DNA of 64,000 nucleotides from Phallusia mammillata. Its lineage: Eukaryota. The notes beneath the pieces are model-generated. The model saw only the letters and a program-made list of their open reading frames with translations, was not told the origin of the DNA and made no database searches. Position 1 is the stretch's first letter. Each line of letters starts with the position of its first letter. Shown here piece after piece: positions 4,962 through 61,796 of the stretch. The stretch is taken from positions 22,382,001 through 22,446,000 of the forward strand of contig OZ281497.1 of NCBI GenBank assembly GCA_965637545.1, written 5' to 3'. Position numbers and translations under genes: made by a program.

Positions 4962-6994
4962 ATGCAAACTGGTGTAAGTTTACAAACTTCGCCTATTTTT
5001 TATTTTTTTGTGTGAAATGTGTGTATGGCAACCGAAATGAATTAAACAAATAAGAAAAGATACTTAATATGTTACCTATGCAAGCTTTTAACTGTTGACA
5101 TAACTGTGCTTATAAATAAGATGTTGTATAGTAAAGATGTTTGCCGGTTAGGATTCGACACCAAAAACGATAGTACTAATTAATTCAACGCTTTTCCAAC
5201 CGGAGTAGGCTATACATTGTTTCATAAATATATTTAGCGTGGACCGCAAATTGCTTGAGAAAATCGTGTGGGGATCGTTATGACACAACATACAAAATTT
5301 TGAGAACAACTGTACCAAAAAAAATCTTGCTAATCTCGAGTACAGATTCTCGAACGTTTTTCAATGGGACCCAAGTATTTTAAAATCTAATTTTATGAAT
5401 GTTTTCGGCTCATAGATATACAGTTCTATTTCTAACAGAAATAGGCGTGCCAAAACAATTTTCAGGTTACCCAGGTTAGGGTCGCGATTAATACTTTGAG
5501 AAACACTGGTCCAGAGGACTGTATCTACTATGTGTTGCATGTTGTAATTGAATGGCTGTTCATGTTGTAAAATTGATTTAGGCTGATTTGCCGGGAGTCT
5601 CGCAAAGAGTACCCAAGATTTCAGCTGATGAGTTAGTTACCAGTCGGAATTCAAATGATTTTCTCGGTAAAGGTGGTTATGCTTGTGTGCGAAGGTGTAA
5701 GTACAACAACGATGTTGTAGCTGCAAAGTGCTACAGCCTAACATTTAGCGGCGATGAATTACAATCCAAAACTAATGGGTAAGGTGCCATTCTCTACATG
5801 TAAATGACCTGTTTGTCGTAATCAACGAATGTGTTCCGTAATTCAGGTTTCTGACAGAAGTAAACGCCTTGGCCCGAATAAACCACAAACATATTGTGAA
5901 AGTACATGGATATGCCATTTGGAAAACGTACAACGTGGCAATTGTCATGGAGTATGTGCAGGGAAGAAGTCTAAAATCCTATTTGCACCATAACCCGAAT
6001 ATGGAAATACCTTGGCCGTTTCGGTTAAAGATTGCTTTCCAACTTTCTTTAGCTTTGCAGTATTTGCACAATTATGAACCAGGACATGCGCTTCGTCATG
6101 GAGATGTGAAACCAGAGAACATAATCATCACCAAAAAATGTGTGCTAAAATTGACCGATTTTGGGGCGGCACAGATCATTCGAGCCACTGGTCTTGACGC
6201 AAGCACATCCGAAGTTCCCACCACTGGCCAGTCAACATTATTGTATGCTCCCCCGGAAGTTGAAAACCTAAATGTACTAGGCGACATGTACAGGTATGGT
6301 AACGCTGCTGTGTGCAACTTGTTTAATTTATCATAAAATTGTGTTACATCTTGACGTTGCAGTTTTGCCATCGTGGTTTTTGAGATCATTACAAGAACCA
6401 CGCCATTTTCGGAGTATAGTTTTTCTATTTTGTTGCATTTAAAACAAAGCGGAAAAAAGCCCCTGAAAGGACTTGATATAGTCAGTTTAGTGTTAGAATC
6501 ACAACCTATCTACAACAGTCTGAAACATATCATGGAAAAATGCTGGGATAATAATCCAGAAAACCGTTGGAGTGCTTCGAAAGGTAACTAACTCGAAGAC
6601 TAAAACAATCAACTGTCAAAATCATAATTGTGGTTGTGGTTTCAGTTGTTGATTATTTGGAAACAAGTTTCAAAAACAATCCTGAGAGCGGAGCCAACGG
6701 TGACCTTTTTGAGATTAATGATGAAATAAACAACCAAAACGTTGAAATGTCGCAGTTCAACGCTCCGTTCCTAGAATGTGCCACACCCCCAATTGAAGCA
6801 GGTAATCGAAGAACCCCTGAATTAAATATTTTATAGGGTGCTTTGTAAACTAAGTGATTCGTCTAAATTGTTGCAAAAGATGTAAAAAATGCATTTCTGT
6901 AGTGGCTATAACAGATTTTTTTCCATTTTTAACAGTTACCCACACCGTGAATAACATTACCTTCTACGCCAATACGGTTAACATCAATACCTGA
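4962..6994 (+). CDS. KinB1: intact RIPK-like non-RD kinase, 363 aa, with N/T/I/V-rich C-terminal tail (exons 4962-4973, 5582-5778, 5847-6293, 6363-6583, 6646-6801, 6936-6994)
   Basis: MQTG|ADLPGVSQ...; GKGGYA, VAAK, FLTE, HGDVKPEN, DFG, YAPPE, DMYS, KCW...ENRW. GT-AG introns, total 1092 nt in frame. The 12-nt first exon is supported by the analogous MEME|gtaagt exon of KinB0. Confidence 0.82.
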
Positions 6995-7102
6995 TGGTAA
7001 GTATATGAAAGCATTCAAAGTCTTTTCCTTTTTTAGTTGGTAAAAAGTAATTTGTAAAATCTCTTTAAAAATTAAAAAAAATAACTTGATCTCTTACAAA
7101 AG

Positions 7103-7283
7103 GCACGGGGTTAATGATCGACTTCTCGATGAATACAAAAGCTTGTATGTCGCAAAGGCACCAATATTAGACATCCGAAAATACAATTTGTTATTCTCTC
7201 GATCAAGTAAATCGATGGGTATAGCATGGAAAATGTCAAGCAGGTCGCAACGTCACCGACGCAGTAGAATAAATTGGATTTGA
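7103..7283 (+). other. Exon downstream of KinB1 stop, open in the KinB1 frame (3'UTR exon or relic coding exon)
   Basis: Donor TG|gtaagt at 6997 lies 2 nt after TGA, and acceptor tacaaaag lies at 7101-7102. The phase matches and the frame stays open to TGA at 7281-7283. Confidence 0.5.
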
Positions 7284-7827
7284 ACAGTATCACAGGTGCA
7301 ACCGACACACACGAAATATATAGGAATCATCAACGCATTTTTACTGTTGGTAGTGTCATACACTGTAATTTACCCCTCTTAGTGGTGCATACATTTACCC
7401 GCATATATTTGAAACAGCGAAAACTCCGTTATTAAACTATTTTCGCGAATCGGTGATGACAAGGTTTGCGTTTGTTAAAACAGCTTTTGTCTTTCTGTTT
7501 CCATTTCTTGTCTCATCGTATTTCCGTTTTGTTATCATACGACGTTACCATTTCGATTTCTTCTCGTGCTATTATAGTATACAGCTAGTGATTTTTGATA
7601 CTTGACGACCTATCGTCTACAATAAGTTTGAACCTTCTCTATAAGTTTATAACAGATTTATAATCGTAATAGTGCCTTGTACTTAATACGTATGCCATGT
7701 ATTTAAAAATATAGTTGTGCCCTTCTAAACGATTCACAGAGTTTTCATAGGTTGCTTTTATATTGCATTTTTATGTATTTTAAGGAACCAGCATTTTATA
7801 TATTGTGCTAGTGTAGTTGCTTTGTAC

Positions 7828-8231
7828 TGGTGATGCACCGAACCCGCCTCAACGGTTCGGGACGAAATCGAATACTCGACCACAAGGCCAAATAACTTCG
7901 GCTGAATAAGGCCGAAATAAGGCCGAAAAATCCCTTTTTGATCGATGTTTTTAACTGAACCTTGTGTAGCTGATGCAAGTGAACTGGTTTTAAGGCACTC
8001 CAAAATATTTTCACAATGCGTAACCTTTACCAAAGTTTTAATATTTAGCAGATAACTCGGCTCGTAATTTTTAGATGCAGCAATTACTTAATGTATGATG
8101 TTTCATTATGGTGATATTGTAAGTTGAGGCACTAATTTCATACAATTACATTTTCAGGCCGATAAAAGTTCTGGCCGAAACCGAAACAAAGAAAATGGCA
8201 TACTCGGCCGATAAACTTCGGTGTATCACCA
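7828..8231. mobile_element. hAT-type MITE
   Basis: TIRs TGGTGATGCACCGAA / TTCGGTGTATCACCA, 8-bp TSD CTTTGTAC/GTTTGTAC (7/8), internal GGCCGAAA repeats. Confidence 0.8.
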
Positions 8232-31299: not shown

Positions 31300-34200
31300 T
31301 CGTTGCAGGCAATGCTTTGATGCCGGGAAATATTTGAGACCGGCTTGATACGATATTACAACTGTTCACATGTGAGCGTGCATTGTCGTTGATTTGCATG
31401 GACGCTTGCGCTTAAGCGGTCGGTCCAAGCAATTAATAAATGTTCATTTCAGCTCATTTAGTAAATGTTGGTGTTTATTTCTAAAACATATCTAATTTTA
31501 GGAACTCGTGAGCAAAAGTTTGGAAGCAGCAAATGCTTTGGTTTCATACACTCGCCGCTATGTCCCTGTTTACGGCTTGGTTGGTATATGTCTTATTTCT
31601 TGCTTCCACAATCTACAATTTCACACAAATCAGTCCTAACGTTCCACGCTAACAATCTTGTTTTAAGGCAAAAATTCAAAATCTATTGCTTTGGAACAGT
31701 AAGGTTCGTTTGACTTTCAGATTGGGATTTTAATTGTATATGGATGATGGGTTGTAAATCGAAGGACGTGTATTGTTGTCATGTCGATTTTATGAAATTT
31801 AATCGAAGAACCTATGTTTCGCTAGGAGAAAATATGTATTCCGACGTGGTCCGTATCTGAGGCAAGTTTCTTTTTTCTCTGTGTTTTTTTCTGGATACAA
31901 ATTTGAATCTGGTCCAGTCCAAACAACATTATGCAAAATTGATCAAAATGAAATAAAACATTTTTGTGCCCTCTACTCGTTTTTATTGGACAAAAACGTT
32001 TTAAAAAGTCGCTGTGATGCAGAGGAATATAATGTTGTGGTAACAACTGGCACCATCAATTATCATAGTACATTTATTGAAAGATACGTCAAATCAAAAG
32101 TCCCGACTGGCTTGTTAAAATGTGTCAATTGTATCAATGCACCTTACGTTTGCGTCCGTAGGTAGAGAAATATGATCAACAACCAAACGAGACAAAGAAT
32201 TTTAGCTTGGGAATTTCTGAGTGGAAAGTTTATCACATTGGTGGATATATTGGCAAAGAGATTGAAACAGTAGATGAAGTGTGGTCTTTTAACAAAAGCT
32301 GTGAGGAATGGAACGTTGAAAGACCGATGATCGAAAAACGTCAAAAAGCGGCTGTGGCTTGTGTTGATGGTGAGTTTAAATGTCATGTGTAAACACAAAA
32401 AATCGTATAAAAAGGCGGATGTGACACGCTGATTTTATGGTGCAGTCAACGGCTGATTTGAGTTTATTTTGTCGGGTTAAACAAATCGCAGCAGCACAAT
32501 TGTGCTAAAATATCCCCCTAACCGCAAACATCTGCGCAACGTTAAGACGTTATGAAGCGCGACTAAAGTAGAGGGCGTTTGACAAAAGTACATATTAAGT
32601 TACAGAAAAAGCTTACAAACTAAACAAACACTTTCTTTAAACAACTCATAATTGATGTGAAAAACGTTAATAAATTTTTAAAAAATATATAAAGCACCCT
32701 ATGGATTGACGCGTCATTGGCAGGGGTACTGGATAACATTTCACATAGGCCCAACTTGTTTGCATCCTAGTCGGTGTTCAGCTGCCTGCTGAAGGAACTG
32801 CAACGTATCATCTGCTCTTGCAACTACCAGCACACCAGCAAGCGACTTAGTTAATTCACACAAAACCTCGCGTGTAATATTGGAAAATGAGCTTGTCACA
32901 GGCAAGTGAAACTTCACTAAAATTTTAGGACAAACACCTAAAAACTACAACGGATACTTGCATGTATCATAAAATTTATAGATGCATACATTTTACACGG
33001 GTAACAATTTAATCCACTAAAGTGCTATATATGCATGGATTGCATGCAAACCTGAAACTAGTAGTAGCGATGGAGTTACGGTACATTAATCTACGTAAGG
33101 GATTGGAACTTCGGCTGTAATGCTTGCCTACATGACAGCTGCTTGTTTTACGACTTAAACTTGTCTAACTTCTCAACTAGATGTTCTGTACGTTGCTGGA
33201 GGAATTGGGTTCAACAAAAAGCGGTTAAAATGCATGGAGAAGTATGAGAACAACCGTTGGGAAAAACTTGCTTCAATGAGCTCCTTCCGAAAAAACTTCG
33301 TCCTTGTACCTTGCGAAGGTTTGAATTAAAATATACAAACTCAACCAGTTACAACCACTCCCATTCTTTTCCAAAACAGGTAGGCTATTATCTTTGCATT
33401 CGGTGGATAGGGAAACGCAATGCTTGGGTGGAATCCATAGAGGTTTACTCAATGAACTACAACTACTGGTCAACAGTATCTGAAAAATGCCCAAATCTAC
33501 CTAACATGGAAATGACAGTGGTCCAAGACGATAAGGTTTACATAGGTTAGTACAGTGTTTCTTAAACTATGTTCAACGGTACATTAGCACGCGGCGAGAG
33601 ATTTACGAGCATGCCACGAAAGATTTAAAAATTATACTGCAAACATTCTCTGGTGTTTTAGGACGTTTAACTGCAAGCGTGTACGACAACGTTATAAGCT
33701 CATCTATTTCTTATTTCTTATCAAAAGCAATTCCTTCCACCACATTATATAGTTGTAAATTAAATTTACTTTCACAACTTTCATGTACAGTTGGCCAGCA
33801 GTGTACCACAAAAAAATTAAGGTGATTAATGCGTGCAGAGGTAAAACGTTTGAGAACAACTATGGTACTTTATTAGTAACTTACAAAAAGATTCAAATTA
33901 AAACACGCTCAATACATCGCATTTTTACGTAACATTTTTGATTAAATTAGGATGAATTTCTTTTTAAAGGGCATGTTCTTATTTTCATCAAGAAATAAAT
34001 GTCCTCGAAGAACATAAAAAAATGCCGAAATGTCCTCCTTTAGCTCTATCCTGTTTTTGCTGATAACATATATGTGACAGTTGTGAAAACAGAAAAAAAT
34101 ACACCGAAAGCTTAAACTTTTTGGACATAAACATGAGTGTCAAACGAAACAACTTTGTGCCAAACAATCTAACACTAAGTTAAACGAAAAGAAAACATAA

Positions 34201-35945: not shown

Positions 35946-38900
35946 TCATCTACCAAAAAGTCCTGAACCGAAACTTGCAGCTGAACCAAATGTATTAGCG
36001 GGCAGTGGCGGTCCCATGGTACACGAACCAAAATCAGGAAAGCCTAGAGTAAGACTGGCGCATCGTTCCACAATTCCAGTTTCTGCATTCATTCCAGTCA
36101 CCCACTGTCGTCGTGCCAAGTCAAAAGTGGCAACTTGGATGGTATCGTCTCCGTGAACTACATAGTTAATAAACGTTTTTTAGCAAAAGGCAAATTTTGT
36201 GCAAGTCGTAATCAAATTGTTGTAGTTGCTAAGTTTTTGCAGCTGACAACATAAAGTGGATTCTATTTGTTGAATCCAAACATAAAAAAGTCTTGCAGCT
36301 GGTATTATTGTTATATTGTTGCAATATTAATTGGAAGAAAAAGACTTGGCAATACACTAAAAAACTGAAATAGTGCAAACATTAGGTGAAAAGTTTTTGT
36401 GATTCCCCCTTTCCTTGATTTTTTGAACATACGTTTTCTTCGCACATTAGTTAATCTATAACCCTGACTTAATGACACTTTATAAGCTTGATAGTTTATG
36501 CGTTTGCAAACAACGCACTTTTGAAAGATTCGTTGCACAAACAGTGGTTTAAAGTTAGTGAGCAAAGTGATTTGAACTAGGTATTAACAGTGTTTGTAGG
36601 ACAACATTTGTACTGTAACTTACCGATGTACGCCCTGTTTTGACGAACCAAATACATTTTGACGTTTAAAATATCCGGACCTGATAGGGTTAATGTTTCC
36701 CAGGTGTTTGACTTAATCGTGTAAACTTCTATCGGAACTGAAGGTAGTACACTAAGTCCAGGTTGCTGTCTTCTTTTATTTTTGCTTGTCGGCTTTGTGT
36801 TTCTTTTGCAACCGATGGCAAACAAATATCCTGTTTTGTTGTCAGCGGAACGAAATATATAAGAAATATTTTAACGAACTGCAACATTTCTATAAGTTTT
36901 AAGTTATTGGTTGGTCTTAAAATTTGACAATGTAAATTGATTGCATACAACTAGTGATATTAGTACACGCATAAGTCGCAGGTTTTTTTTCAAGCTTCGC
37001 AGGCTTGCGGAATATAACTTACAAAAAATCAGCGAATATACGGACATATAGCCTAATATTTATAAATGCTTACGATTGGAATAAGTAAGTATGTTTATTT
37101 CGGACGAAACATTCGAACAAAAAAAAAATTAAAAATAGAAAGTGCGGGGTAGCGAAAGACTCTGTGGTCACCGTGTCGCCCACCCCTTATAAGATTAAGA
37201 TGTGTATTTGTTTTGAAAGGTTTCACACCGTAGATTCATGGATTTAAGACCTTGAAGCAGGCAACGGAAACAAATTTGCTTCAGTATTTATATTTGTAAT
37301 TCAACTTTAAAAGCGAAAAGTTCAGTATTTATATTTGTAATTCAATTTTAAACGTGAAAAATAAACTAGCCTACCGTCATATGGTACAAGTGCAAAACAT
37401 GATCTGTCATATTTCATGGAGGAATGTTGTGTGGTTCGTTGTCCGCTAAAATCTTTCTTGTAACTTTCCAGCTTACAGTTAAACGTTCCACTAGCCACAT
37501 ATAAAGTATCTGCGTGGTATAATCTTAAATTTAATAAACATACACTTGAAGATTTTGCTTTGTTGGAAAAAACTTACCACCAACAAACGCAACTGCTCCT
37601 TCTGAATACCTAGTCGTCAACCGGACTTCATCCTGCCAATTTGCATCACGAAGGGACCATGCCTTATCATAATCAATTGCATACAATTTTTCAAAACCAT
37701 AAATTAATGGTAAGCTTCGTTTTGAAATATTATAGTCTGCCGTCTCAAAAATAAACACAAAAAATCTCGCACAAATGCAAACAAAAGTGCAAGACTTGTC
37801 AGGGAAAATTTTATGTTTGAATTACCTTTATTTTCACCCACTTAGGAACAAAAATACTGTGGTTGTCAAATGCTTTTGGTTTTAATGCAGACATGTCGCA
37901 ACTATACACATCACCCGATTGACACATCACATACATTGTGTCCAAAGCTAACTCTGCAGAATATTTACAGTGAATATTTTAGTGAATGGAATGGTTTTAC
38001 TAAAACGGCAAAAAATGTGTGTAAAAAACAGGTTTTATGTAAAAAATTTACATTCAGGTTATGATGAAAAGAGCAGTAACAACCAAGATGTAATGCAAGT
38101 TCTGCTTGACATTAAAATAAACACAATAATGTCAAATCTGTTGAACCATTTTTTATTTATTTTTTTCAACTTGTGCAGTTGATGACTTTCATTTAGTTAA
38201 ACCCGATCAGCTGGTTTGAGCAATACCGCCCAAGTTCTTGCTCAAGGAAACAATAGCAACCAAAATAAGATTAGAACCCATAACTTTGTGAACATCATGC
38301 GCCAACCACTCGACCATCTTGGCGAGGATGTTGTAACAACGCAAAAACACCAACAATAAAATAAATAAAACGAACACACTGACCAGTTTGAGCATTTGGA
38401 ACAAACTGTCGCATGTAAGGTATCACTGCCTTTGCAGCTGCAAAGTTTTGGCTTACAAGGTTCTGAAATATAAAACAAAAATTCAGCCAAATCGTTGAAA
38501 AAATGGAAATTGCAATTCCCTGCAGTGGCGTAGGCAGACGAAAATTTTGAGAGGGGCCAAATAGGTTGCTGTCTAAAACAACTTTTTTGCTAATGCTCGG
38601 CGTAAGGCGTGCTTATGGCAAACACGTGACTTGCCAAACTTTGACGGTACTGCCAAACGCTTAATAGATTTATTCCATGTTCACATAAACATAAGAAGCA
38701 TGGACTTCAGCTTACAACTTGGTGACAACAGTCATTTTTGATAATTTATATATTCCTTTGATAGTTGAAAGACGAAACCGCAATGATGAGGGCCAAAACT
38801 ACACTAAATTAAAGTTTCTCAATATACAACTTTAAAAATTTGGGAGGGACCATGGCCCCTTTGGCTTTAAAACAGTCTACATATTTGGATGTTTTATAAT

Positions 38901-41734
38901 GATGGTTCTATTTATTTTAGAATTTAGATTTCAGAGTAATTTGAAAGATAAAAGTGTGCAATTGCAAATAGTAAACACATTCATGAAAAGTATAATCACT
39001 GCTTTTTTCTAATAAATCCAGCAGCTGTGTAAACTCTAAAGATTTAACATTAGTCTGGTGGTACTGCAGACCATTTATTCTGGTTGTACTACAAAACATT
39101 GAAATATTTATATTTTCCAAAAAAGTTAAGATACATCATAATAACCCTACCTTCATATTTATCAAAAGCACCCAAGTTGATTGGGAAAGTGATTTTGGTT
39201 CAATCATGTCATAAAACATTTCAAACTTTTCCATTCTTTTGTCCATGTCATGTTTGATCCACAAAAGTGCACATTTCATTAACTGATCATCAGACACTTT
39301 TCCCTGATTGAATAGCATGTTTAATTAAAGGATTTGTATACTTATGTAGCAATCATAAACTATCATTTTAAATGTATTTCCACGTATGCCTTCAGAAAAG
39401 GTATGCTTGGCAGAATGAGATAGAGAACCTTGATTAATTTTATAAAATCCTCCATGTAAAGTTGGTCAATGTTGCGAAATTGGTTACTGTTAATGATAAA
39501 AAACACATGAGCACAAATTTGTTGCTCCGCATGTTGTATTAAAATTTGTTTTTTAAACTTTATTCCAGCAATCCATATATCAATACAGTTGTTATGTGAT
39601 ATCATTTCCACAATGCAATTTTCAATCTCATCACTGAACTCTGCAATCAAAGAACAGAAGATTTAGTACTGCACTACACTGTTTAGGTAGATTGCTTATC
39701 TTAATTAACAAAAATGTTTAGTTAAATATTTTGCCAACAACTAGAAGGGTGGCTTAGCACATTTTGCCTTTGCACATACACTATAACCTATTTTGAAATG
39801 TTGATATATTCTCTATACTTAATTGGAAATGGGTCCTATATTCTTCATCGTCTTTTATAACCTTAGTTGTTTCAGCAGGAGGAAGCTTTTGGGTCCCACT
39901 CTACAAACTGTCCAAACTTTATACAATTCCAACACTGTTTGAAAAACTTGTCCATTTTAGGGGCTGGTGGTGTACATGTTAAAAATATAGGGTGAAAACT
40001 TAAATTGGTACCTAAAAATGACATCATCTACTACCTGTCTGAATTGCATTCAATTTCGACTTAGTTTACAAATTTTACCTATTTTAGGGGTCAATGGGGT
40101 ATATGGTGGGGCTACAAGGTAAAACACAACAATCGACACCTATAAATGACAAATTCTACATGCTGTCCAAATTTCATTTTTTTCCGACATTGTTTAAAAA
40201 AGTCGCCCATTTTAGGGGGTTAGTGGGGCAACTGGCGGGGTTCAAGAAAGGGGACCCATAATTAGTGTTTTTAGTAAGCATAATAATTATGTTACCTTTC
40301 ATACAAAAGTAATCAGTGACAGCCAACAAGTCATTCAACATATCTTGATTAACCCAGATTTTTTTGGTGTAAATAAAATCAAATACCAATGCCATACTTT
40401 CATCATCAATTTCACTTATGTGACAAGTTGATTGATGTTTTTCTTTCATCTGCATAATAAGCGTAAACGAGCCACAAGCAAAAATTTTTTAACCTATATT
40501 TAAAGTGACTACAGTAAAATAATCATTGTGCTGCAAAAACATGCTGATTGTTGACCAACATAGGTAAGCAATTCACTATTAAATTTTACAGGCAAAAAAA
40601 AGCACAACAGAAAAATGAACAATTGTGATAATAATGTTACATCTAAAAATTTGGCCAACCTCTGTTGTAAAAAGTTTGTTGAAATACTCAAATTGCACAG
40701 CAACAATTGATTTATGAACATGAAACTGCCTTGTTCCTGTTGAGATTGTGACATCACAATACTTTTGCGATCCAAAGCGATCACTATTAATCACAAAAGT
40801 CACCATTTAACATATAGCCTACATTTTTAGAAGGATTTGTCAAAAAAATTGAAAGTTGTACATCACACTTGTATACTCAAATTCCGACCAAGAAACCAAA
40901 AACAAACTTTTTTACAACGTCAACCAGAAAATTAAAGATTACCTGTTTAGTTGGTGTCGAACAAATTTGTCCAATGCACTTTGATCAGTGTCGTCAACAA
41001 CTGCTAATCAAAGAGATAAATTTGCACAATTGCATTTTCCAAACAACATAATTAAACATTTAAAAAGGGCACAACATACACCATATAGAAAATAGTATTT
41101 TCTGTGTTTTGCTGAACATATTAGTTACTATGTGTAACCTTTTTCAAAGCCTTCAGGGAGAATTATTTCTGGGTCTTCCACCACCCTTCCTTCATAAATA
41201 TTGTTAATAAAATCTTTAATTCTTTGAAATTTGTTGCTATCTTCAATTTCCACAATTCCAAAATCTACAGCAACCTGTTAATAAGTTTCAGTAAAAAAAA
41301 ACAGATTTTAAACAGTATGAAAATAACAATAAAATATAACTTTTGTTTTATAATTACAAATTTTTCAATAAAAGCAATAACATATTACCTTGGAAAACAA
41401 ATCATCAAAAAAGCTAAATGTTGTCCCAAACAGACATCTGTGAAGAACAATTTTTTCATGGTCATGAGTGATTGTAAGATCACAAAATTTTTGTTCATCA
41501 TTTCTATCCCTGTATAACAAGCATTTTTTTACTTTTGTAAAATCATGAAAACCAAGGCAGTTATGCACCTTTGCAACAGATTTGTAAGACTGAACTCAGG
41601 AGCATCACTTCTTGCATCCAGCAAAACTTGTGTTCTGGAATGGTGCAAAGATATTGTTTTAACATAAAAATGATACAAATATGTTGTATAAGTTACCTTG
41701 TTAGTTTTCGTCTTTTTGCTGAAACCTCAGACAT
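35946..41734 (-). CDS. K3: intact truncated-BTB/BTB/BACK/Kelch protein, 663 aa, putative CUL3 adaptor (exons 41697-41734, 41569-41634, 41389-41509, 41139-41274, 40943-41003, 40660-40783, 40296-40449, 39429-39640, 39151-39303, 38384-38462, 37826-37953, 37578-37743, 37375-37509, 36624-36830, 35946-36157)
   Basis: 15 GT-AG exons with consistent phases sum to 1992 nt without stops. BTB motifs FCDLTI..LHRCLF and YCDVTI..VHKSIVAVQFEYFNKLF..FIYT, BACK NCIDIW / CALLWIKHD, Kelch-like LYVASG, YLFAIG, EVYTIKSNTW. Confidence 0.8.
38150..38325 (-). mobile_element. tRNA-derived SINE in K3 intron (decayed copy ~58150-58305 in the homologous K4 intron)
   Basis: A-box-like GGTCGAGTGGTTGG, B-box-like GGTTCTAATC, conserved SINE core-like TTTCCTTGAGCAAGAACTT, A-rich tail. 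Confidence 0.7.
39830..40262. mobile_element. Probable non-autonomous insertion in K3 intron 7
   Basis: Three CCATTTTAGGGG-type repeats and GGGTCCC/GGGACCC ends. The homologous K4 intron is ~0.5 kb shorter. Confidence 0.4.
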
Positions 41735-47800: not shown

Positions 47801-49692
47801 GGCTGTTTTGGTAAGACCTTCTGCGTTGTATTTTTTGCCCGTGTACCACAGTTTAATGCAGTTATCTCCAGATACCAAATCGCACAGCGTGGATGCAATA
47901 ATTTTGCCAAAGACTGCAAAAAGTAATAAAGTTTCACTTGGAAAATACTGTTTCACTTGGATACAAATTAAAAAATAACAAAATGTGTTACCTTCCATAC
48001 AAAAATAGTCAGCGGCAGCTAACAAATCAAGAAACTGGTCATCTTTTACCCACACCTCTTTGTTGTAAATAAATTCTAAAATCATGGACATAATGTCATT
48101 GTCAATAGCTGTCACGTGAAAGGTCGATTCGTATTTTTCCTTCATCTACAAAAAAGTGAACTGAGGAACCAATACGAGTCGGTGTTTTAATACATTGTCT
48201 GCAGTGTTAGGTAACATTTTTACAACGTTCTTTAAGGTTGCGCAGTGGACACACCAATGGTGAACTGCTGTGTTGAAATTTTGGTCATATAAACGAATTT
48301 AGTTTGCGCGTAGTTGTCTGAACAAATGTACCATAGGTATGGCATGTCACATTTTTGTTATTTTAAAATGTTTTTTATACATTTTTGTAGTCATAATACC
48401 TCTGTTGTAAACAACTTTGCGAAATAAGGTGCTTGTACAGCTACGACTGGCTTGTGAATAAAGAATTCCCTCGTCCCGGTTGTAATTGTGACATCACAAT
48501 GCCTATGAGGCCCCAATCTGTCGCTAAAAAGGAAATAAAGGAGAATCGAGTTCATTTTGTTTCCCAGACCAAAAAGTTACTTTACTGTCATTTCCAATAC
48601 AGTAAGGCTTCTTACTTGTTGAGTCGATCACGAATAAATTCCTCTAACGTTTGTTCGGTTGTAATGTCTTCAAAAATTTGTAATAAATATGTGGGTATTT
48701 ATTTATGAAAAAGAAATCATTTCAACACCTACCTTTTCCAGCAGTTTTAGTAAAGTCGGATTGAAATTCTTCCCTCACAAATCCACAATAAATGGTTTGG
48801 GAGAACTCTTTTATTTTTTCAAATTCATTGCGATCTTTTAAGGTGACTGTTGTGTCTTCTATGGAAAGCTAGAAATAAAACTGTAGTCATTTTTCGGCAA
48901 TTGTCTAAACAACAATAGTCTGCTTAGTTTTGTTCAAATAAAGTTGTAGAATTACTTGGGCTAATGCTGAAATAATAGAAAATAGTGAACGTATTTATAT
49001 TTGCTCATGAAAGCTATTTTAGTTACTGATCACATGTTTAAAACACACTTTGGCAAAGGTTCTTTTGAAATTTTCGGACACTGCCTCCAACAAGCACTTA
49101 TGCACGACAACACTATTGTCTTCGTGGATAATGGTAAGGTCACAGAATTCATGGTTTTCGTCACGGTCTCTGCAAGTATAAATTAAAATGTGTAATAACT
49201 GTGTCACTATGCCATATCATAACTACGCTGCAAGTCGGCCTTTATAACGACAAACCCAGGAATTGCGGTTTAAACCAGGTTTGTAAGCGGGCACAAAATT
49301 GGTTTCTGAACCCGAAAATACAACTCCGAAACCCGGCCAAAAACAGCCTTAAATATCTAAACCCGACCATGACAGCCGTTGTTAAACGTTTATATCCCAA
49401 TCGTATTTTTTTCCACACCAATATATATCACATTTCAAATGCCCTGTCTATGTGCTATGATAAAAGTAAACAAAAGTCGTACCTGCGCAGCAAAGGAATA
49501 AGATCAAACTCGTCACATTTATCGTCCGGTTTAACAAGAGTCTGTATTCTGAAAAACGTGGTATTAGGGAGGTTTTTAGCAAAAAAAAGTGTGTTACGTC
49601 CGAAACATTAAGCAGAATGTTTTTGGAAGCAGAACGGTTCAACAATACCTTGTTACTTTTTTTGGTGACTTTTCTAATCCTCCACACCACAT
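44856..49692 (-). pseudogene. K2: full-length truncated-BTB/BTB/BACK/Kelch paralog, pseudogenised
   Basis: Exon series from MWCGGLEKSPKKVTR through two BTB starts (FCDLTII..VHKCLL; HCDVTI..IHKPVV) to ...LDQKFAGI*. In-frame TGA 46708-46710, a frameshifted BACK exon (~46990-47120), and a deletion altering the phase at the 45432 donor. Confidence 0.8.
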
Positions 49693-59158: not shown

Positions 59159-59844
59159 GTGTAGAGGATTTATATAATTATGCCAAAATTATAATATATC
59201 ATTTCAAATGTATTGTTACTCATGACAGTTCTCCAGAAAAGGTCGTAGAATGAAAAACAAATAACAATAACCTTGATTAATTTCATAAAATCCTTCATGT
59301 AATGTTGGTCAATGTTGCGAAATTCGTTACTGTCAGCAACAAAAAGCACATGTGCACAGATTGTTCGCTCAGATTGTTGCATTAACTTTTCTTTTTTAAA
59401 CTTTTTTCCAGTAATCCACATTGTAACACGGTTTTCAAATGATACCAATCCCACAAGGGAATTTTCAATCTCATTACTGAATGCTGCAATCCAATTACAT
59501 TAGATTTAGCACTGGACTACAATGTTTAGGTGAAATAAATTACTAAAACATTGTTTTTAATTTCTTCAATAAAATAATATAGAAAATTGTGTTTTTTTTA
59601 GGCATAATAGTTATGTTACCTTCCATACGAAAGTAATCACCAACAGCTAACAAATCACTCAGCATATCTTGATTAACCCACATTTTTTGGGTGTAAACAT
59701 AATCCAAAACCAATGCCAGAATTTCATCATCAATTTCACCAATGTGACATGTTGATTGATGTTTTTCTTTCATCTGCATAGTAAGCATAAACTTGCCCAA
59801 AGCAAAACAAAAACTTTTTTTACTACAGTCTCAAGTGCCTACAC

Positions 59845-60049: not shown

Positions 60050-60797
60050 GGCTACACTAAAGTAATACGTTCTGCTCCAGAAATTAGAAGGTTGTTGACA
60101 AACAGTGGTACATTCAAACAGTGATACAATTTTAAATATTAGAAGCAAAAAATAAAACTTAAAAATTGTACAAAGTAATGAACAACTGCGATAATAATGT
60201 TACATATGACAGTACCAACCTCTGTTGTAAAAAGTTTGTTGAAATACTCAAATTGTACAGCAACAATCGATTTATGAACATGAAACTGCCTTGTTCCTGT
60301 TGAGATTGTGACATCACAAAACTTTTGCGATCCAAAGCGATCACTATTAATCACAAAAGTCATCATTTAACATGTAGCCTACATTTTTACAAAGGATTTG
60401 TCAAAAAAATGAAAGTTGTACATCACAGTTCAGAAGATTGAAGATTACCTGTTAAGCTGGTGTCGAACAAAATTGTCCAATGCACTTTGATCAGTATCAC
60501 CAACAACTACTAATCAAAGAGATAAAATTTGTACAATAATTGATTTTTTCAAACAACATAATTAAACATTTAAAAAGGGCACAACATACACCATACATAA
60601 AATAGTTTTTTTTATTTTTTGCTGTACAGTTTTCTATTTTTTGTTGTATGTATTACTATGTGTAACCTTTTTCAAAGCCTTCAGGGAGAATTATTTCTTG
60701 GTCTTCCGACACCCTTTCTTCATAAATATTCTCAATTACCTCTTTAATTCTTTGAAATTTATAGCGATCTTTGATTTCTAGAATTCCAAATTCTACA

Positions 60798-60950
60798 GCA
60801 ACCTATTAATAAGTTTCATTAAAAACATCCAGTGATTTTAAACAATATAAAAGTCGCAATAAAATATTTCTATGGCAACCTATTAATAAGTTTCAGTAAA
60901 AAAAATTACAGTAATTTTAAACAGTATAAAAGTCCCAATAAAATATAAAT
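60798..60950. repeat. 77-bp tandem duplication covering the K4 exon-4 splice acceptor
   Basis: GCAACCTATTAATAAGTTTCA recurs at 60798 and 60875. Confidence 0.85.
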
Positions 60951-61796
60951 TTTGTTTTATGACTTCATATTTTTGAAACAGATTATCCACAAAACAATAA
61001 TATGTACATACTACCTTGGAAAATAAATCATTAAAAAAGCTCAATGTTGCCCCAAAGAGACATCTGTGAAGAATAACTTTTTCATGGTCATGAGTGATTG
61101 TAAGATCACAAAATTTTTGTGCATCATCTCTATCCCTGTATAACGAACAGTTTTGTTACTTTTTAAAATGATGAATACCAAGGCAATTATACACCTTCTT
61201 AACAGACTTATAAGACTGAACTCAGGAGAACCTTTTTTTGCATCCAGCAAAACTTGTGTTCAGGAATGGTGCAAAAATAAGCTTCAACATGATAAGAAAA
61301 AATGATAATAAGTTGTATAAGTTACCTTGTTAGTTTTCGTCTTTTTGCTGAAACCTCAGACATAGTTAATACTTTTCCTACACTACAGCTAGTAAATGCT
61401 TTCGCTTAAATTATTATCCTAACGTTTACAGCTAGTAAATAATCGCTTAAACTATTATCCAAACGTTTGATCCATCATATAGAATATCATTTTTACAACC
61501 ATTCAGGTTGATGCATGGCTTTACCACAACCTATAAGAATAAAACCGCTGGTAGACTGTCCGTGTAAAGTCCCAGATTTCAACATTTTAAGTTGTTTATA
61601 ATCAGGTGCAGGCAAATCAGACCAGATACAATTAACAGAAAATATTTACTGTACTTTACCCAGTTTGTTCCATCAAGTGCTATGTTTTCCTTATGTATTT
61701 ACATCTGACTTTTTTTGATAAACTAACGAACGAAGATGACTAATAACTGTAAGTATTTGATGGAAAGTTGGAAAACAGAGAAAGTGCGTTTGATGC

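What the first reader, a model, noticed from the sequence alone, without database searches (positions are those of the whole stretch)
40296..41734. Kelch-like family with two tandem BTB starts (truncated BTB + full BTB + BACK + Kelch)
Seen: K3, K4 and K2 each encode two BTB N-terminal signatures. In K3 the first is LLQRDRNDEQKFCDLTITHDHEKIVLHRCLFGTTFSFFDDLF...DFINNIYEG, which stops after the IY-G motif. The second is LDKFVRHQLNSDRFGSQKYCDVTISTGTRQFHVHKSIV...DFIYT...DYF. The exons starting at DR(N/F) are 121 and 124 nt with identical phases, implying internal exon duplication. Established: canonical KLHL proteins have one BTB that mediates dimerisation and CUL3 binding. Inference: the half-BTB could form an intramolecular pseudo-dimer or alter CUL3 assembly, an architecture I do not recognise among KLHL proteins.
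Basis: partly seen in the sequence, partly recalled or inferred. Interest (0 to 1): 0.7.

Follow-up and report, generated by a model that had tools for sequence, protein, structure and literature searches.

The report
Sea-squirt Kelch genes with extra half-BTB
A sea-squirt-specific cluster of twelve BTB-Kelch (ubiquitin-ligase adaptor) genes really does carry an extra, expressed and conserved partial BTB domain in front of the normal one, made by duplicating exons; this is an unusual but not unique variant of a well-known protein family.

Summary
K3 is a 15-exon, 663-aa BTB-BACK-Kelch gene on the minus strand (35946-41734). Spliced RNA contigs support its exon junctions.

- **Two modules.** Exons 2-4 encode a first BTB-like module covering Pfam BTB positions about 6-78 of 110. 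Exons 5-8 start the complete BTB.
- **Shared exon plan.** Exons 3/6 and 4/7 have the same intron positions and phases. The exon 3 and exon 6 profiles are homologous (hhalign 97.7%).
- **Family size.** The module occurs exactly 12 times in the genome, all in one 120-kb tandem array. Exon lengths are fixed.
- **Selection.** dN/dS is about 0.33 for the half-BTB against 0.17 for the full BTB.
- **One origin.** A single duplication predates the array.
- **Independent support.** A public Phallusia mammillata protein (A0A6F9DG24) is the spliced product of paralogue K11 and contains both modules.
- **CUL3.** The half-BTB lacks the phi-x-E loop, helices A4-A5 and an adjacent 3-box. It is therefore unlikely to bind CUL3.
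- **Mechanism.** A cis pseudo-dimer with BTB2 is plausible but untested here. It is supported only by analogy: an AlphaFold model of a metagenomic half-BTB+BTB protein matches tethered BTB dimers 4U2M/4U2N.
- **Precedent.** BTB-BTB-BACK-Kelch proteins are already annotated in amphioxus and a hemichordate, but no paper describing them turned up in four full-text searches.

Verdict: a new variant of a known kind, of moderate interest.

The parts
41697..41734 (-). K3 exon 1 (coding part; ATG at 41734). Encodes MSEVSAKRRKLTR. The 5' UTR reaches at least 41820.
   Evidence: Joint 41634/41697 and a contig reaching 41820; translation.
41569..41634 (-). K3 exon 2: N-terminal extension (beta1/alpha1-like) of the first, partial BTB.
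   Evidence: RNA joints. A conserved TQ(T/V)L..A..DS..F.LI.LL(Q/R) motif in paralogues.
41389..41509 (-). K3 exon 3 (121 nt): half-BTB part a (B1-B2-A1-A2; FCDLTI...HRCLFGT...FF..LFS).
   Evidence: Pfam BTB positions 6-42/110, E=0.006. hhalign against exon-6 profile 97.7%, E=2.5e-12. RNA joints.
41139..41274 (-). K3 exon 4 (136 nt): half-BTB part b (B3-A3 up to IYEG, then a 17-residue tail). No phi-x-E loop and no A4/A5.
   Evidence: RNA joints. 45 codons + 1 base in all 12 paralogues. In K11, Pfam BTB positions 33-78 span this exon. No significant match on its own.
40943..41003 (-). K3 exon 5 (61 nt; alternative acceptor at 41000): linker plus the beta1/alpha1 N-terminal extension of the full BTB.
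   Evidence: Joints 41003/41139, 41000/41139 and 40783/40943. The equivalent K11 residues align to the N-terminal extension of the PATZ1 BTB.
40660..40783 (-). K3 exon 6 (124 nt): full BTB, N-terminal part.
   Evidence: Pfam BTB positions 7-42, E=1.3e-8; RNA joints.
40296..40449 (-). K3 exon 7 (154 nt): full BTB, phi-x-E (M-K-E) loop through A4.
   Evidence: Pfam BTB positions 46-96, E=4e-7. E3 and K4 are invariant and M1 and K2 are in at least 90% of the 12 paralogues. RNA joints.
35946..39640 (-). K3 exons 8-15 (39429-39640, 39151-39303, 38384-38462, 37826-37953, 37578-37743, 37374-37509, 36624-36829, 35946-36157): BTB end, BACK and Kelch propeller.
   Evidence: RNA joints, except that the exon 8/9 junction (39429/39303) was placed from consensus splice sites and the exon 15 acceptor at 36157 was chosen by frame, 5 nt from the contig joint. 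Open 663-aa frame. Homology to P0010 BACK/Kelch.
48733..49169 (-). K2 half-BTB exons (E3 49049-49169; E4 48733-48868). The full-BTB exons follow at 48400-48523 and 47992-48145.
   Evidence: tblastn. Pfam BTB on E3: 26.0 bits, above the 20.5 cutoff. Splice sites.
60667..61135 (-). K4 half-BTB exons (E3 61015-61135; E4 60667-60802). The full-BTB exons follow at 60220-60343 and 59620-59773.
   Evidence: blastn collinearity with K3; tblastn; Pfam.

Best explanation
K3, K2 and K4 belong to a 12-gene tandem array of BTB-BACK-Kelch genes in Phallusia mammillata or a very close relative. No relative of the module was found in other species in the protein collections searched. Before the array expanded, one tandem duplication copied the exons for the N-terminal extension and the first two thirds of the BTB fold (beta1/alpha1, B1-B3, A1-A3). 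This put a partial BTB in front of the complete BTB. Both modules are spliced into one mRNA and translated in one frame. The partial BTB is kept by purifying selection but evolves about twice as fast as the full BTB. It has lost the phi-x-E loop and helices A4-A5, and it has no 3-box next to it. Only the second BTB, which keeps an invariant M-K-E motif, should therefore recruit CUL3. The partial BTB keeps the elements that make BTB dimer interfaces. The most likely working model (inferred, not shown) is that it pairs with the full BTB of the same chain as a pseudo-dimer. That would give a single-chain adaptor with one CUL3 site and one Kelch propeller, instead of the usual two-fold symmetric CRL3 adaptor.
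For: Shown:
- Gene model and co-splicing of exons 1-8, with an open 663-aa frame.
- The UniProt protein A0A6F9DG24 (P0010) is the spliced K11 product with E3(part)-E4-E5-E6-E7 in order, 96-100% identical per exon.
- Twelve copies with fixed exon sizes and phases. The E4 module occurs exactly 12 times in the genome, all in this array.
- E3 and E6 profiles are homologous: 97.7%, E=2.5e-12.
- E3 sequences and E6 sequences each form one clade, with support 96/97 and 96/96.
- Median dN/dS is 0.33 for the half-BTB and 0.17 for the full BTB.
- Pfam BTB coverage of the first module is positions 6-42 and 33-78 of 110.
- M-K-E at the start of E7: E3 and K4 are invariant and M1 and K2 are in at least 90% of paralogues. 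E4 starts with V/I-A/S-V/I-G and the loop is about 5 residues shorter.
- The CUL3-contact regions of KLHL3 are alpha3/alpha3.1 with phi-x-E, beta4, alpha5 and the 3-box, and E85A abolishes binding (PMC3616122).

By analogy:
- The AlphaFold model of the metagenomic half-BTB+BTB protein P0014:1-235 has pTM 0.80.
- Its best PDB matches are the tethered tandem-BTB dimers 4U2M and 4U2N, at TM 0.64-0.73 over about 240 columns. Single-BTB matches reach at most 0.50.
Against: - No structure prediction of the complete K-family N-terminus was possible. The only referenceable family protein (P0010) starts inside exon 3, and its first 65 residues fold with pLDDT 47-66.
- Exon 4 alone shows no significant similarity to exon 7 or to PDB BTB chains, so homology of that part rests on collinearity and one weak Pfam match.
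- The pseudo-dimer model comes from an unrelated protein whose two copies are a very recent duplicate, and from a 9-row alignment.
- K3 vs K4 half-BTB dN/dS is 0.87, so constraint is weak in the youngest pair.
- K10 carries a stop codon in exon 5.
Confidence: 0.55

Rival explanations
1. The partial BTB works in trans. It pairs with the partial or full BTB of another chain, either the same protein or another of the 12 paralogues. This would build hetero-oligomers or chains of adaptors, as multi-interface BTB proteins such as SPOP or LZTR1 do, and not a closed cis pseudo-dimer.
For: The dimer-interface elements (beta1/alpha1 extension, A1, strand after A3) are retained in exons 2-4. Twelve co-located paralogues whose half-BTB evolves faster (dN about 2x) would fit partner-specificity diversification. 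Proteins with two BTB domains that use both for assembly are known (S. pombe Btb3p, PMC1257465; LZTR1).
Against: The analogous half-BTB+BTB protein is predicted to close on itself. The 30-residue tether between modules is compatible with cis pairing. There are no data on oligomeric state.
Confidence: 0.25
2. The partial BTB is a tolerated leftover of an exon duplication. It acts only as an N-terminal spacer with no specific interaction.
For: Exon 4 has diverged to 22-33% identity among the more distant paralogues. dN/dS is twice that of the full BTB and is 0.87 in K3/K4. AlphaFold gives low confidence for the part present in P0010.
Against: Exon lengths of 121 and 136 nt and all splice sites are kept in 12 paralogues. 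Eight residues of exon 3 are invariant, including the fold-core FCDLT, H and F. Median dN/dS of 0.33 is well below 1. No paralogue has lost the module.
Confidence: 0.12
3. The two BTB starts are alternative (mutually exclusive or alternative-first) exons and are not present in one protein.
For: Tandemly duplicated exons are often used in a mutually exclusive way (general knowledge). No single contig spans exon 1 to exon 8.
Against: Every consecutive junction E1-E2-E3-E4-E5-E6-E7-E8 is seen in spliced contigs. No skipping joint is listed among the 15 shown of 16. P0010 contains both modules in one ORF. The phases only give an open frame when all exons are included.
Confidence: 0.03

Closest known systems
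Canonical BTB-BACK-Kelch (KLHL/KBTBD) CRL3 substrate adaptors, e.g. KLHL3, KLHL11, KEAP1
   Same: The second module plus BACK plus Kelch is the standard architecture. Pfam BTB scores 75 bits and Kelch_1 and Kelch_6 are above threshold in K11. The phi-x-E motif is present. The best PDB sequence matches are BTB domains.
   Different: An extra N-terminal partial BTB (about 85 residues of fold plus its own extension) precedes the functional BTB. The Kelch region is divergent.
Predicted BTB-BTB-BACK-Kelch proteins of other invertebrate deuterostomes: Branchiostoma 'KLHL9/26' (C3ZMQ2, XP_035694896) and Ptychodera flava XP_070561541
   Same: Two BTB modules sit in tandem before BACK-Kelch. The first module lacks a phi-x-E motif and the second keeps M-R-E.
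   Different: Their first BTB is full length (Pfam positions 1-105 and 3-100 of 110). There is no specific sequence relationship to the Phallusia module: only P0010 carries an E4-like segment among 102 hits. These are therefore independent origins.
Metagenomic/Logan proteins P0014 and P0092 (truncated BTB + BTB + BACK + Kelch)
   Same: The first BTB stops just after the (I/L)Y(T)G motif, at Pfam positions 1-75 and 3-73 of 110, as in K3.
   Different: They are intronless ORFs of unknown organisms. The P0014 duplication is very recent (visibly near-identical copies). Their linkers are shorter.
Engineered tethered BTB heterodimers, PDB 4U2M (Miz1-BCL6) and 4U2N (Miz1-NAC1)
   Same: One chain carries two BTB modules that fold back into a BTB dimer. 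This is the best structural match for the analogous half-BTB+BTB model.
   Different: They are artificial fusions of two complete BTB-ZF domains with no BACK-Kelch. Relevance to K3 is by analogy only.
Natural multi-BTB proteins: LZTR1 (Kelch-BTB-BACK-BTB-BACK), RhoBTB1-3, IBTK, ABTB1/2, S. pombe Btb3p
   Same: They have more than one BTB per chain and take part in CUL3 ligases.
   Different: Domain order and partner domains differ, and both BTBs are complete. None is BTB(partial)-BTB-BACK-Kelch.

Membership tests
BTB-BACK-Kelch (KLHL-type) proteins | BTB/POZ domain above the Pfam gathering score | tested here: met
   P0010 (K11) PF00651 scores 75.3 bits against a 20.5 cutoff. K3 exon 6 scores 35.4 bits and exon 7 scores 30.6 bits.
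BTB-BACK-Kelch (KLHL-type) proteins | BACK domain after the BTB | tested here: inconclusive
   P0010 PF07707 scores 20.2 bits against a 20.9 cutoff, at residues 192-283 and profile positions 1-94/103. The position is right and the score is marginal.
BTB-BACK-Kelch (KLHL-type) proteins | C-terminal Kelch repeats | tested here: met
   P0010 Kelch_6 scores 29.7 (cutoff 25.3) and Kelch_1 scores 23.1 (cutoff 20.1). K3 exons 11-15 are homologous to that region.
BTB-BACK-Kelch (KLHL-type) proteins | phi-x-E CUL3-contact motif in the alpha3/beta4 loop | tested here: met
   M-K-E at the start of exon 7: E3 and K4 are invariant and M1 and K2 are in at least 90% of the 12 paralogues. The motif definition comes from PMC3616122.
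BTB-BACK-Kelch (KLHL-type) proteins | Binds CUL3 and homodimerises through a single BTB | not testable with these tools
   This needs binding and oligomeric-state experiments. A second, partial BTB is present, so the 'single BTB' part does not hold.
BTB/POZ domain (first module, exons 2-4) | Profile match above the gathering score | tested here: inconclusive
   Exon 3 alone scores 26.0 bits in K2 (above 20.5), 17.2 in K3 and 18.8 in K4 (below). P0010:1-85 scores 17.5 bits. The joined module could not be submitted.
BTB/POZ domain (first module, exons 2-4) | Homology to a bona fide BTB N-terminal half | tested here: met
   hhalign of exon-3 against exon-6 profiles gives 97.7%, E=2.5e-12, over 39 ungapped columns. 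Intron positions and phases are identical.
BTB/POZ domain (first module, exons 2-4) | Complete core fold including helices A4 and A5 | tested here: not met
   Pfam coverage ends at about position 78 of 110. Only 17 residues follow IYEG before the extension of the next BTB.
LZTR1 / RhoBTB type multi-BTB proteins | Characteristic domain order (Kelch-BTB-BACK-BTB-BACK, or GTPase-BTB-BTB) | tested here: not met
   The order here is partial BTB - BTB - BACK - Kelch.

The most novel reading that the evidence does not exclude
The partial BTB is a natural built-in 'dummy partner'. It caps the dimer face of the real BTB in cis and so converts a normally two-fold symmetric CRL3 adaptor into an obligate single-CUL3, single-propeller unit. 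The same solution (a first BTB without phi-x-E in front of a CUL3-competent BTB) would then have arisen independently in ascidians, amphioxus, hemichordates and unknown microbial eukaryotes or viruses.
Probability: 0.3. Interest if true: 0.65.

Novelty: new variant of a known kind. Interest (0 to 1): 0.45.

Why it matters
CRL3 ligases are thought to need BTB-mediated dimerisation for activity (abstract of PMC11074293, listed; the paper itself was not read). A naturally occurring adaptor family carries a conserved, CUL3-blind partial BTB tethered to the functional BTB. It would be a ready-made test of what dimer symmetry contributes, and a natural counterpart of the engineered tethered BTB dimers. 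It is also a clean, datable example of domain-architecture change: one tandem exon duplication followed by a 12-fold gene expansion. If the module proves to be only a spacer, the finding is an ordinary lineage-specific oddity.

Tried and rejected
- **Exon 4 vs exon 7 profiles.** The comparison is not significant. Only 7 collinear columns around IY.G align.
- **Exon-4 profile against PDB sequences.** No BTB hit.
- **Exon 4 and exon 5 alone against Pfam.** Nothing.
- **Word-indexed protein search with P0010:1-180.** It returned only P0010 itself, so no full-length family member with a complete N-terminus was available.
- **AlphaFold of P0010:1-190.** The first 65 residues were low-confidence because the protein starts inside exon 3, so it says nothing about the half-BTB.
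- **MAFFT alignment of exon-4 fragments to P0010.** MAFFT placed them on BTB2. That alignment (A5) was discarded as a folding input.
- **Literature searches.** Four full-text searches were run; the three aimed at this architecture found only LZTR1, RhoBTB, IBTK and ABTB-type proteins.
- **Mutually exclusive exons.** Considered and rejected on the junction chain.
- **Exon 5 as the missing A5 helix of the first BTB.** Considered and rejected, because it aligns to the N-terminal extension of BTB domains.
- **The joined 663-aa model.** It was joined only inside a local script to check frame and length.
Full report
**What is there**

The window is G000:C4:22382001-22446000 of a 240-Mb sea-squirt genome. 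The stretch 40296-41734 is the 5' part of a minus-strand gene, K3.

Contigs from four public runs of the same organism skip every predicted intron with GT..AG ends on the minus strand. They must therefore come from spliced RNA. They give these exons:

| Exon | Coordinates | Note |
|---|---|---|
| E1 | 41697-41734 | coding part |
| E2 | 41569-41634 | |
| E3 | 41389-41509 | 121 nt |
| E4 | 41139-41274 | 136 nt |
| E5 | 40943-41003 | second acceptor at 41000 |
| E6 | 40660-40783 | 124 nt |
| E7 | 40296-40449 | 154 nt |
| E8-E15 | down to 35946 | eight further exons |

Two boundaries are not read directly from a listed joint. The exon 8/9 junction (39429/39303) was placed from consensus splice sites. 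The exon 15 acceptor at 36157 was chosen by frame, 5 nt from the contig joint.

I joined the exons only inside a local script, to check frame and length. Everything else was done exon by exon by reference, or on a database protein.

**Two BTB starts**

- Exon 6 and exon 7 match Pfam BTB at profile positions 7-42 (E=1.3e-8) and 46-96 (E=4e-7).
- Exon 3 matches positions 6-42 more weakly: E=0.006 in K3, 0.002 in K4, and 1e-5 (26 bits, above the 20.5-bit cutoff) in K2.
- Exon 4 gives nothing alone.
- In the database protein P0010, residues 5-48 match BTB positions 33-78 (E=0.005). Those residues are the end of exon 3 plus most of exon 4.
- The first module therefore covers about positions 6-78 of 110. 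It ends 17 residues after the IYEG motif and has no A4 or A5 helices.
- Exon 5 aligns to the beta1/alpha1 N-terminal extension of long-form BTB domains such as PATZ1. It belongs to the second BTB.
- Exon 2 encodes a comparable extension for the first module.

**Origin by exon duplication**

- Exons 3 and 6 both start with one base completing a codon and end in phase 0 (40 and 41 codons).
- Exons 4 and 7 both start in phase 0 and end with one extra base (45 and 51 codons).
- Splice sites are conserved in every copy.
- Profiles of exon 3 and exon 6 are homologous over 39 ungapped columns (hhalign 97.7%, E=2.5e-12).
- In a tree, the 12 exon-3 sequences form one clade and the 12 exon-6 sequences form another (support 96/97 and 96/96). 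K3, K4 and K5 group together in both clades, as do K2 and K12.
- This points to one duplication before the family expanded, with no later exon shuffling.

**A family, not a one-off**

- A search of the whole genome with exon 3, followed by fetching 100 kb downstream, showed 12 paralogues (K2-K13) in about 120 kb. Eleven are on the minus strand and one is inverted. All have E3, E4, E6 and E7.
- The exon-4 profile finds exactly 12 places in the genome, all in this array.
- Median pairwise dN/dS is 0.33 for E3+E4 and 0.17 for E6+E7. Median dN is 0.46 against 0.23.
- The half-BTB is therefore under purifying selection but is about twofold less constrained. The youngest pair, K3/K4, gives 0.87.
- Eight positions of exon 3 are invariant: F8, C9, D10, L11, T12, H23, C25 and F34.

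**Independent confirmation and species**

A profile of exon 3 was searched against 1.84 billion representative proteins and gave 102 hits. Only one, P0010, also contains an exon-4-like segment.

P0010 is UniProt A0A6F9DG24, 'Kelch-like protein 20' of Phallusia mammillata. It is 96-100% identical, exon by exon, to paralogue K11. It begins at an internal Met of exon 3 and then runs E4-E5-E6-E7-BACK-Kelch in one ORF.

The genome is therefore P. mammillata or a very close relative, and both modules are in one product. No protein of any other species in that collection carries the exon-4 module.

**Comparison with what is known**

The same search turned up other Kelch proteins with two BTB matches:

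| Protein | Source | First BTB (Pfam positions) | Second BTB |
|---|---|---|---|
| P0054 / C3ZMQ2 ('KLHL9/26') | Branchiostoma, 7 sequences from several Branchiostoma species and hybrids in the cluster | full (1-105/110) | residues 151-253, then BACK and Kelch |
| P0094 (XP_070561541) | Ptychodera flava | full (3-100) | present |
| P0014 | metagenomic ORF | truncated (1-75) | full |
| P0092 | Logan ORF | truncated (3-73) | full |

In the alignment of these proteins the first BTB lacks the phi-x-E motif and the second keeps M-R-E. The exception is the very recent duplicate P0014.

The general layout is therefore already present in sequence databases and has arisen more than once. Four full-text searches were run; none turned up a paper describing it. 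The searches aimed at multi-BTB architectures returned only LZTR1, RhoBTB, IBTK, ABTB and BTB-ankyrin proteins.

**How it probably works**

In KLHL3 the CUL3 interface has four parts: (i) alpha3/alpha3.1 with phi-x-E (M83-S84-E85; E85A abolishes binding), (ii) beta4, (iii) alpha5 with its loop, and (iv) the 3-box (PMC3616122).

- The full BTB of the K family keeps M-K-E at the start of exon 7: E3 and K4 are invariant and M1 and K2 are in at least 90% of the 12 paralogues.
- In the half-BTB that loop is about 5 residues shorter and reads V/I-A/S-V/I-G.
- Regions iii and iv are absent from the half-BTB.
- Inference: only BTB2 recruits CUL3.

From established BTB structures (my knowledge, not tested here), the retained elements are those that build the BTB dimer interface. 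They are beta1/alpha1, B1-B3, A1-A3 and a short strand after A3.

I could not fold the complete K-family N-terminus, because no reference exists for it. The P0010:1-190 model is confident only from residue 68 onward.

As a proxy I folded the metagenomic half-BTB+BTB protein P0014:1-235 (pLDDT 81, pTM 0.80). Its best PDB matches are the engineered single-chain BTB dimers 4U2M and 4U2N, with TM 0.64-0.73 over both modules. Single BTB domains reach at most 0.50.

This makes a cis pseudo-dimer the leading model. I give it about 0.3-0.4 on its own. Trans pairing among paralogues comes next, and a neutral spacer is third.

**Verdict**

The truncated BTB, its origin by exon duplication and its co-transcription are all supported. 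The claim of an unrecognised architecture is only partly right. It is absent from vertebrate KLHLs and from the literature searched. However, double-BTB Kelch proteins, including truncated-first-BTB forms, already sit in databases for other lineages. The functional idea remains an inference.

Noticed in passing
L006:8868-8870 (G000:C4 about 22504868-22504870; paralogue K10, exon 5): There is an in-frame TGA inside exon 5 (…DEYIRE*LNR), between the half-BTB and the full BTB. K10 is either a young pseudogene or encodes a stand-alone half-BTB protein of about 140 aa.
   Followed up: partly
L005:1120-1224 and about L005:955-984 (paralogue K8, between exons 5 and 6): These are remnants of a further exon-6/exon-7 duplication: an exon-6-like ORF (HKHCDVTIATALRTL…MFTTE followed by GT) and a 10-residue exon-7-like stub. 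Tandem exon duplication therefore recurred at this locus.
   Followed up: partly
L007:1278-1588 (array 125278-125588, between K10 and K11): An isolated exon-6/exon-7-like fragment with an internal stop. It is probably a gene fragment or pseudogene.
   Followed up: no
window 41000-41003: Two acceptors 3 nt apart (NAGNAG-type) are used for K3 exon 5 in the RNA contigs. They give isoforms that differ by one residue in the linker.
   Followed up: no
window 36733-36737: The RNA contigs carry a 6-nt in-frame insertion relative to the genome in K3 exon 14, along with several nearby substitutions. This is likely allelic or strain variation in the Kelch region.
   Followed up: no
window 41697-41734 (also K4 near 61325-61363): Exon 1 of K3, K4 and K5 encodes MSEVSAKRRK(L/V)TR. 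This basic patch looks like a nuclear-localisation signal.
   Followed up: no
window 33180-33544 (+ strand): Kelch-repeat-like fragments lie on the opposite strand just upstream of the array, with no BTB exons detected. They may be a partial gene.
   Followed up: no
L012:3001-5097 and 6680-8097: Two adjacent intronless double-BTB Kelch ORFs (P0033 and a 738-aa neighbour) sit on a 710-kb ENA contig of unknown organism. This is another tandem family with a divergent first BTB.
   Followed up: no
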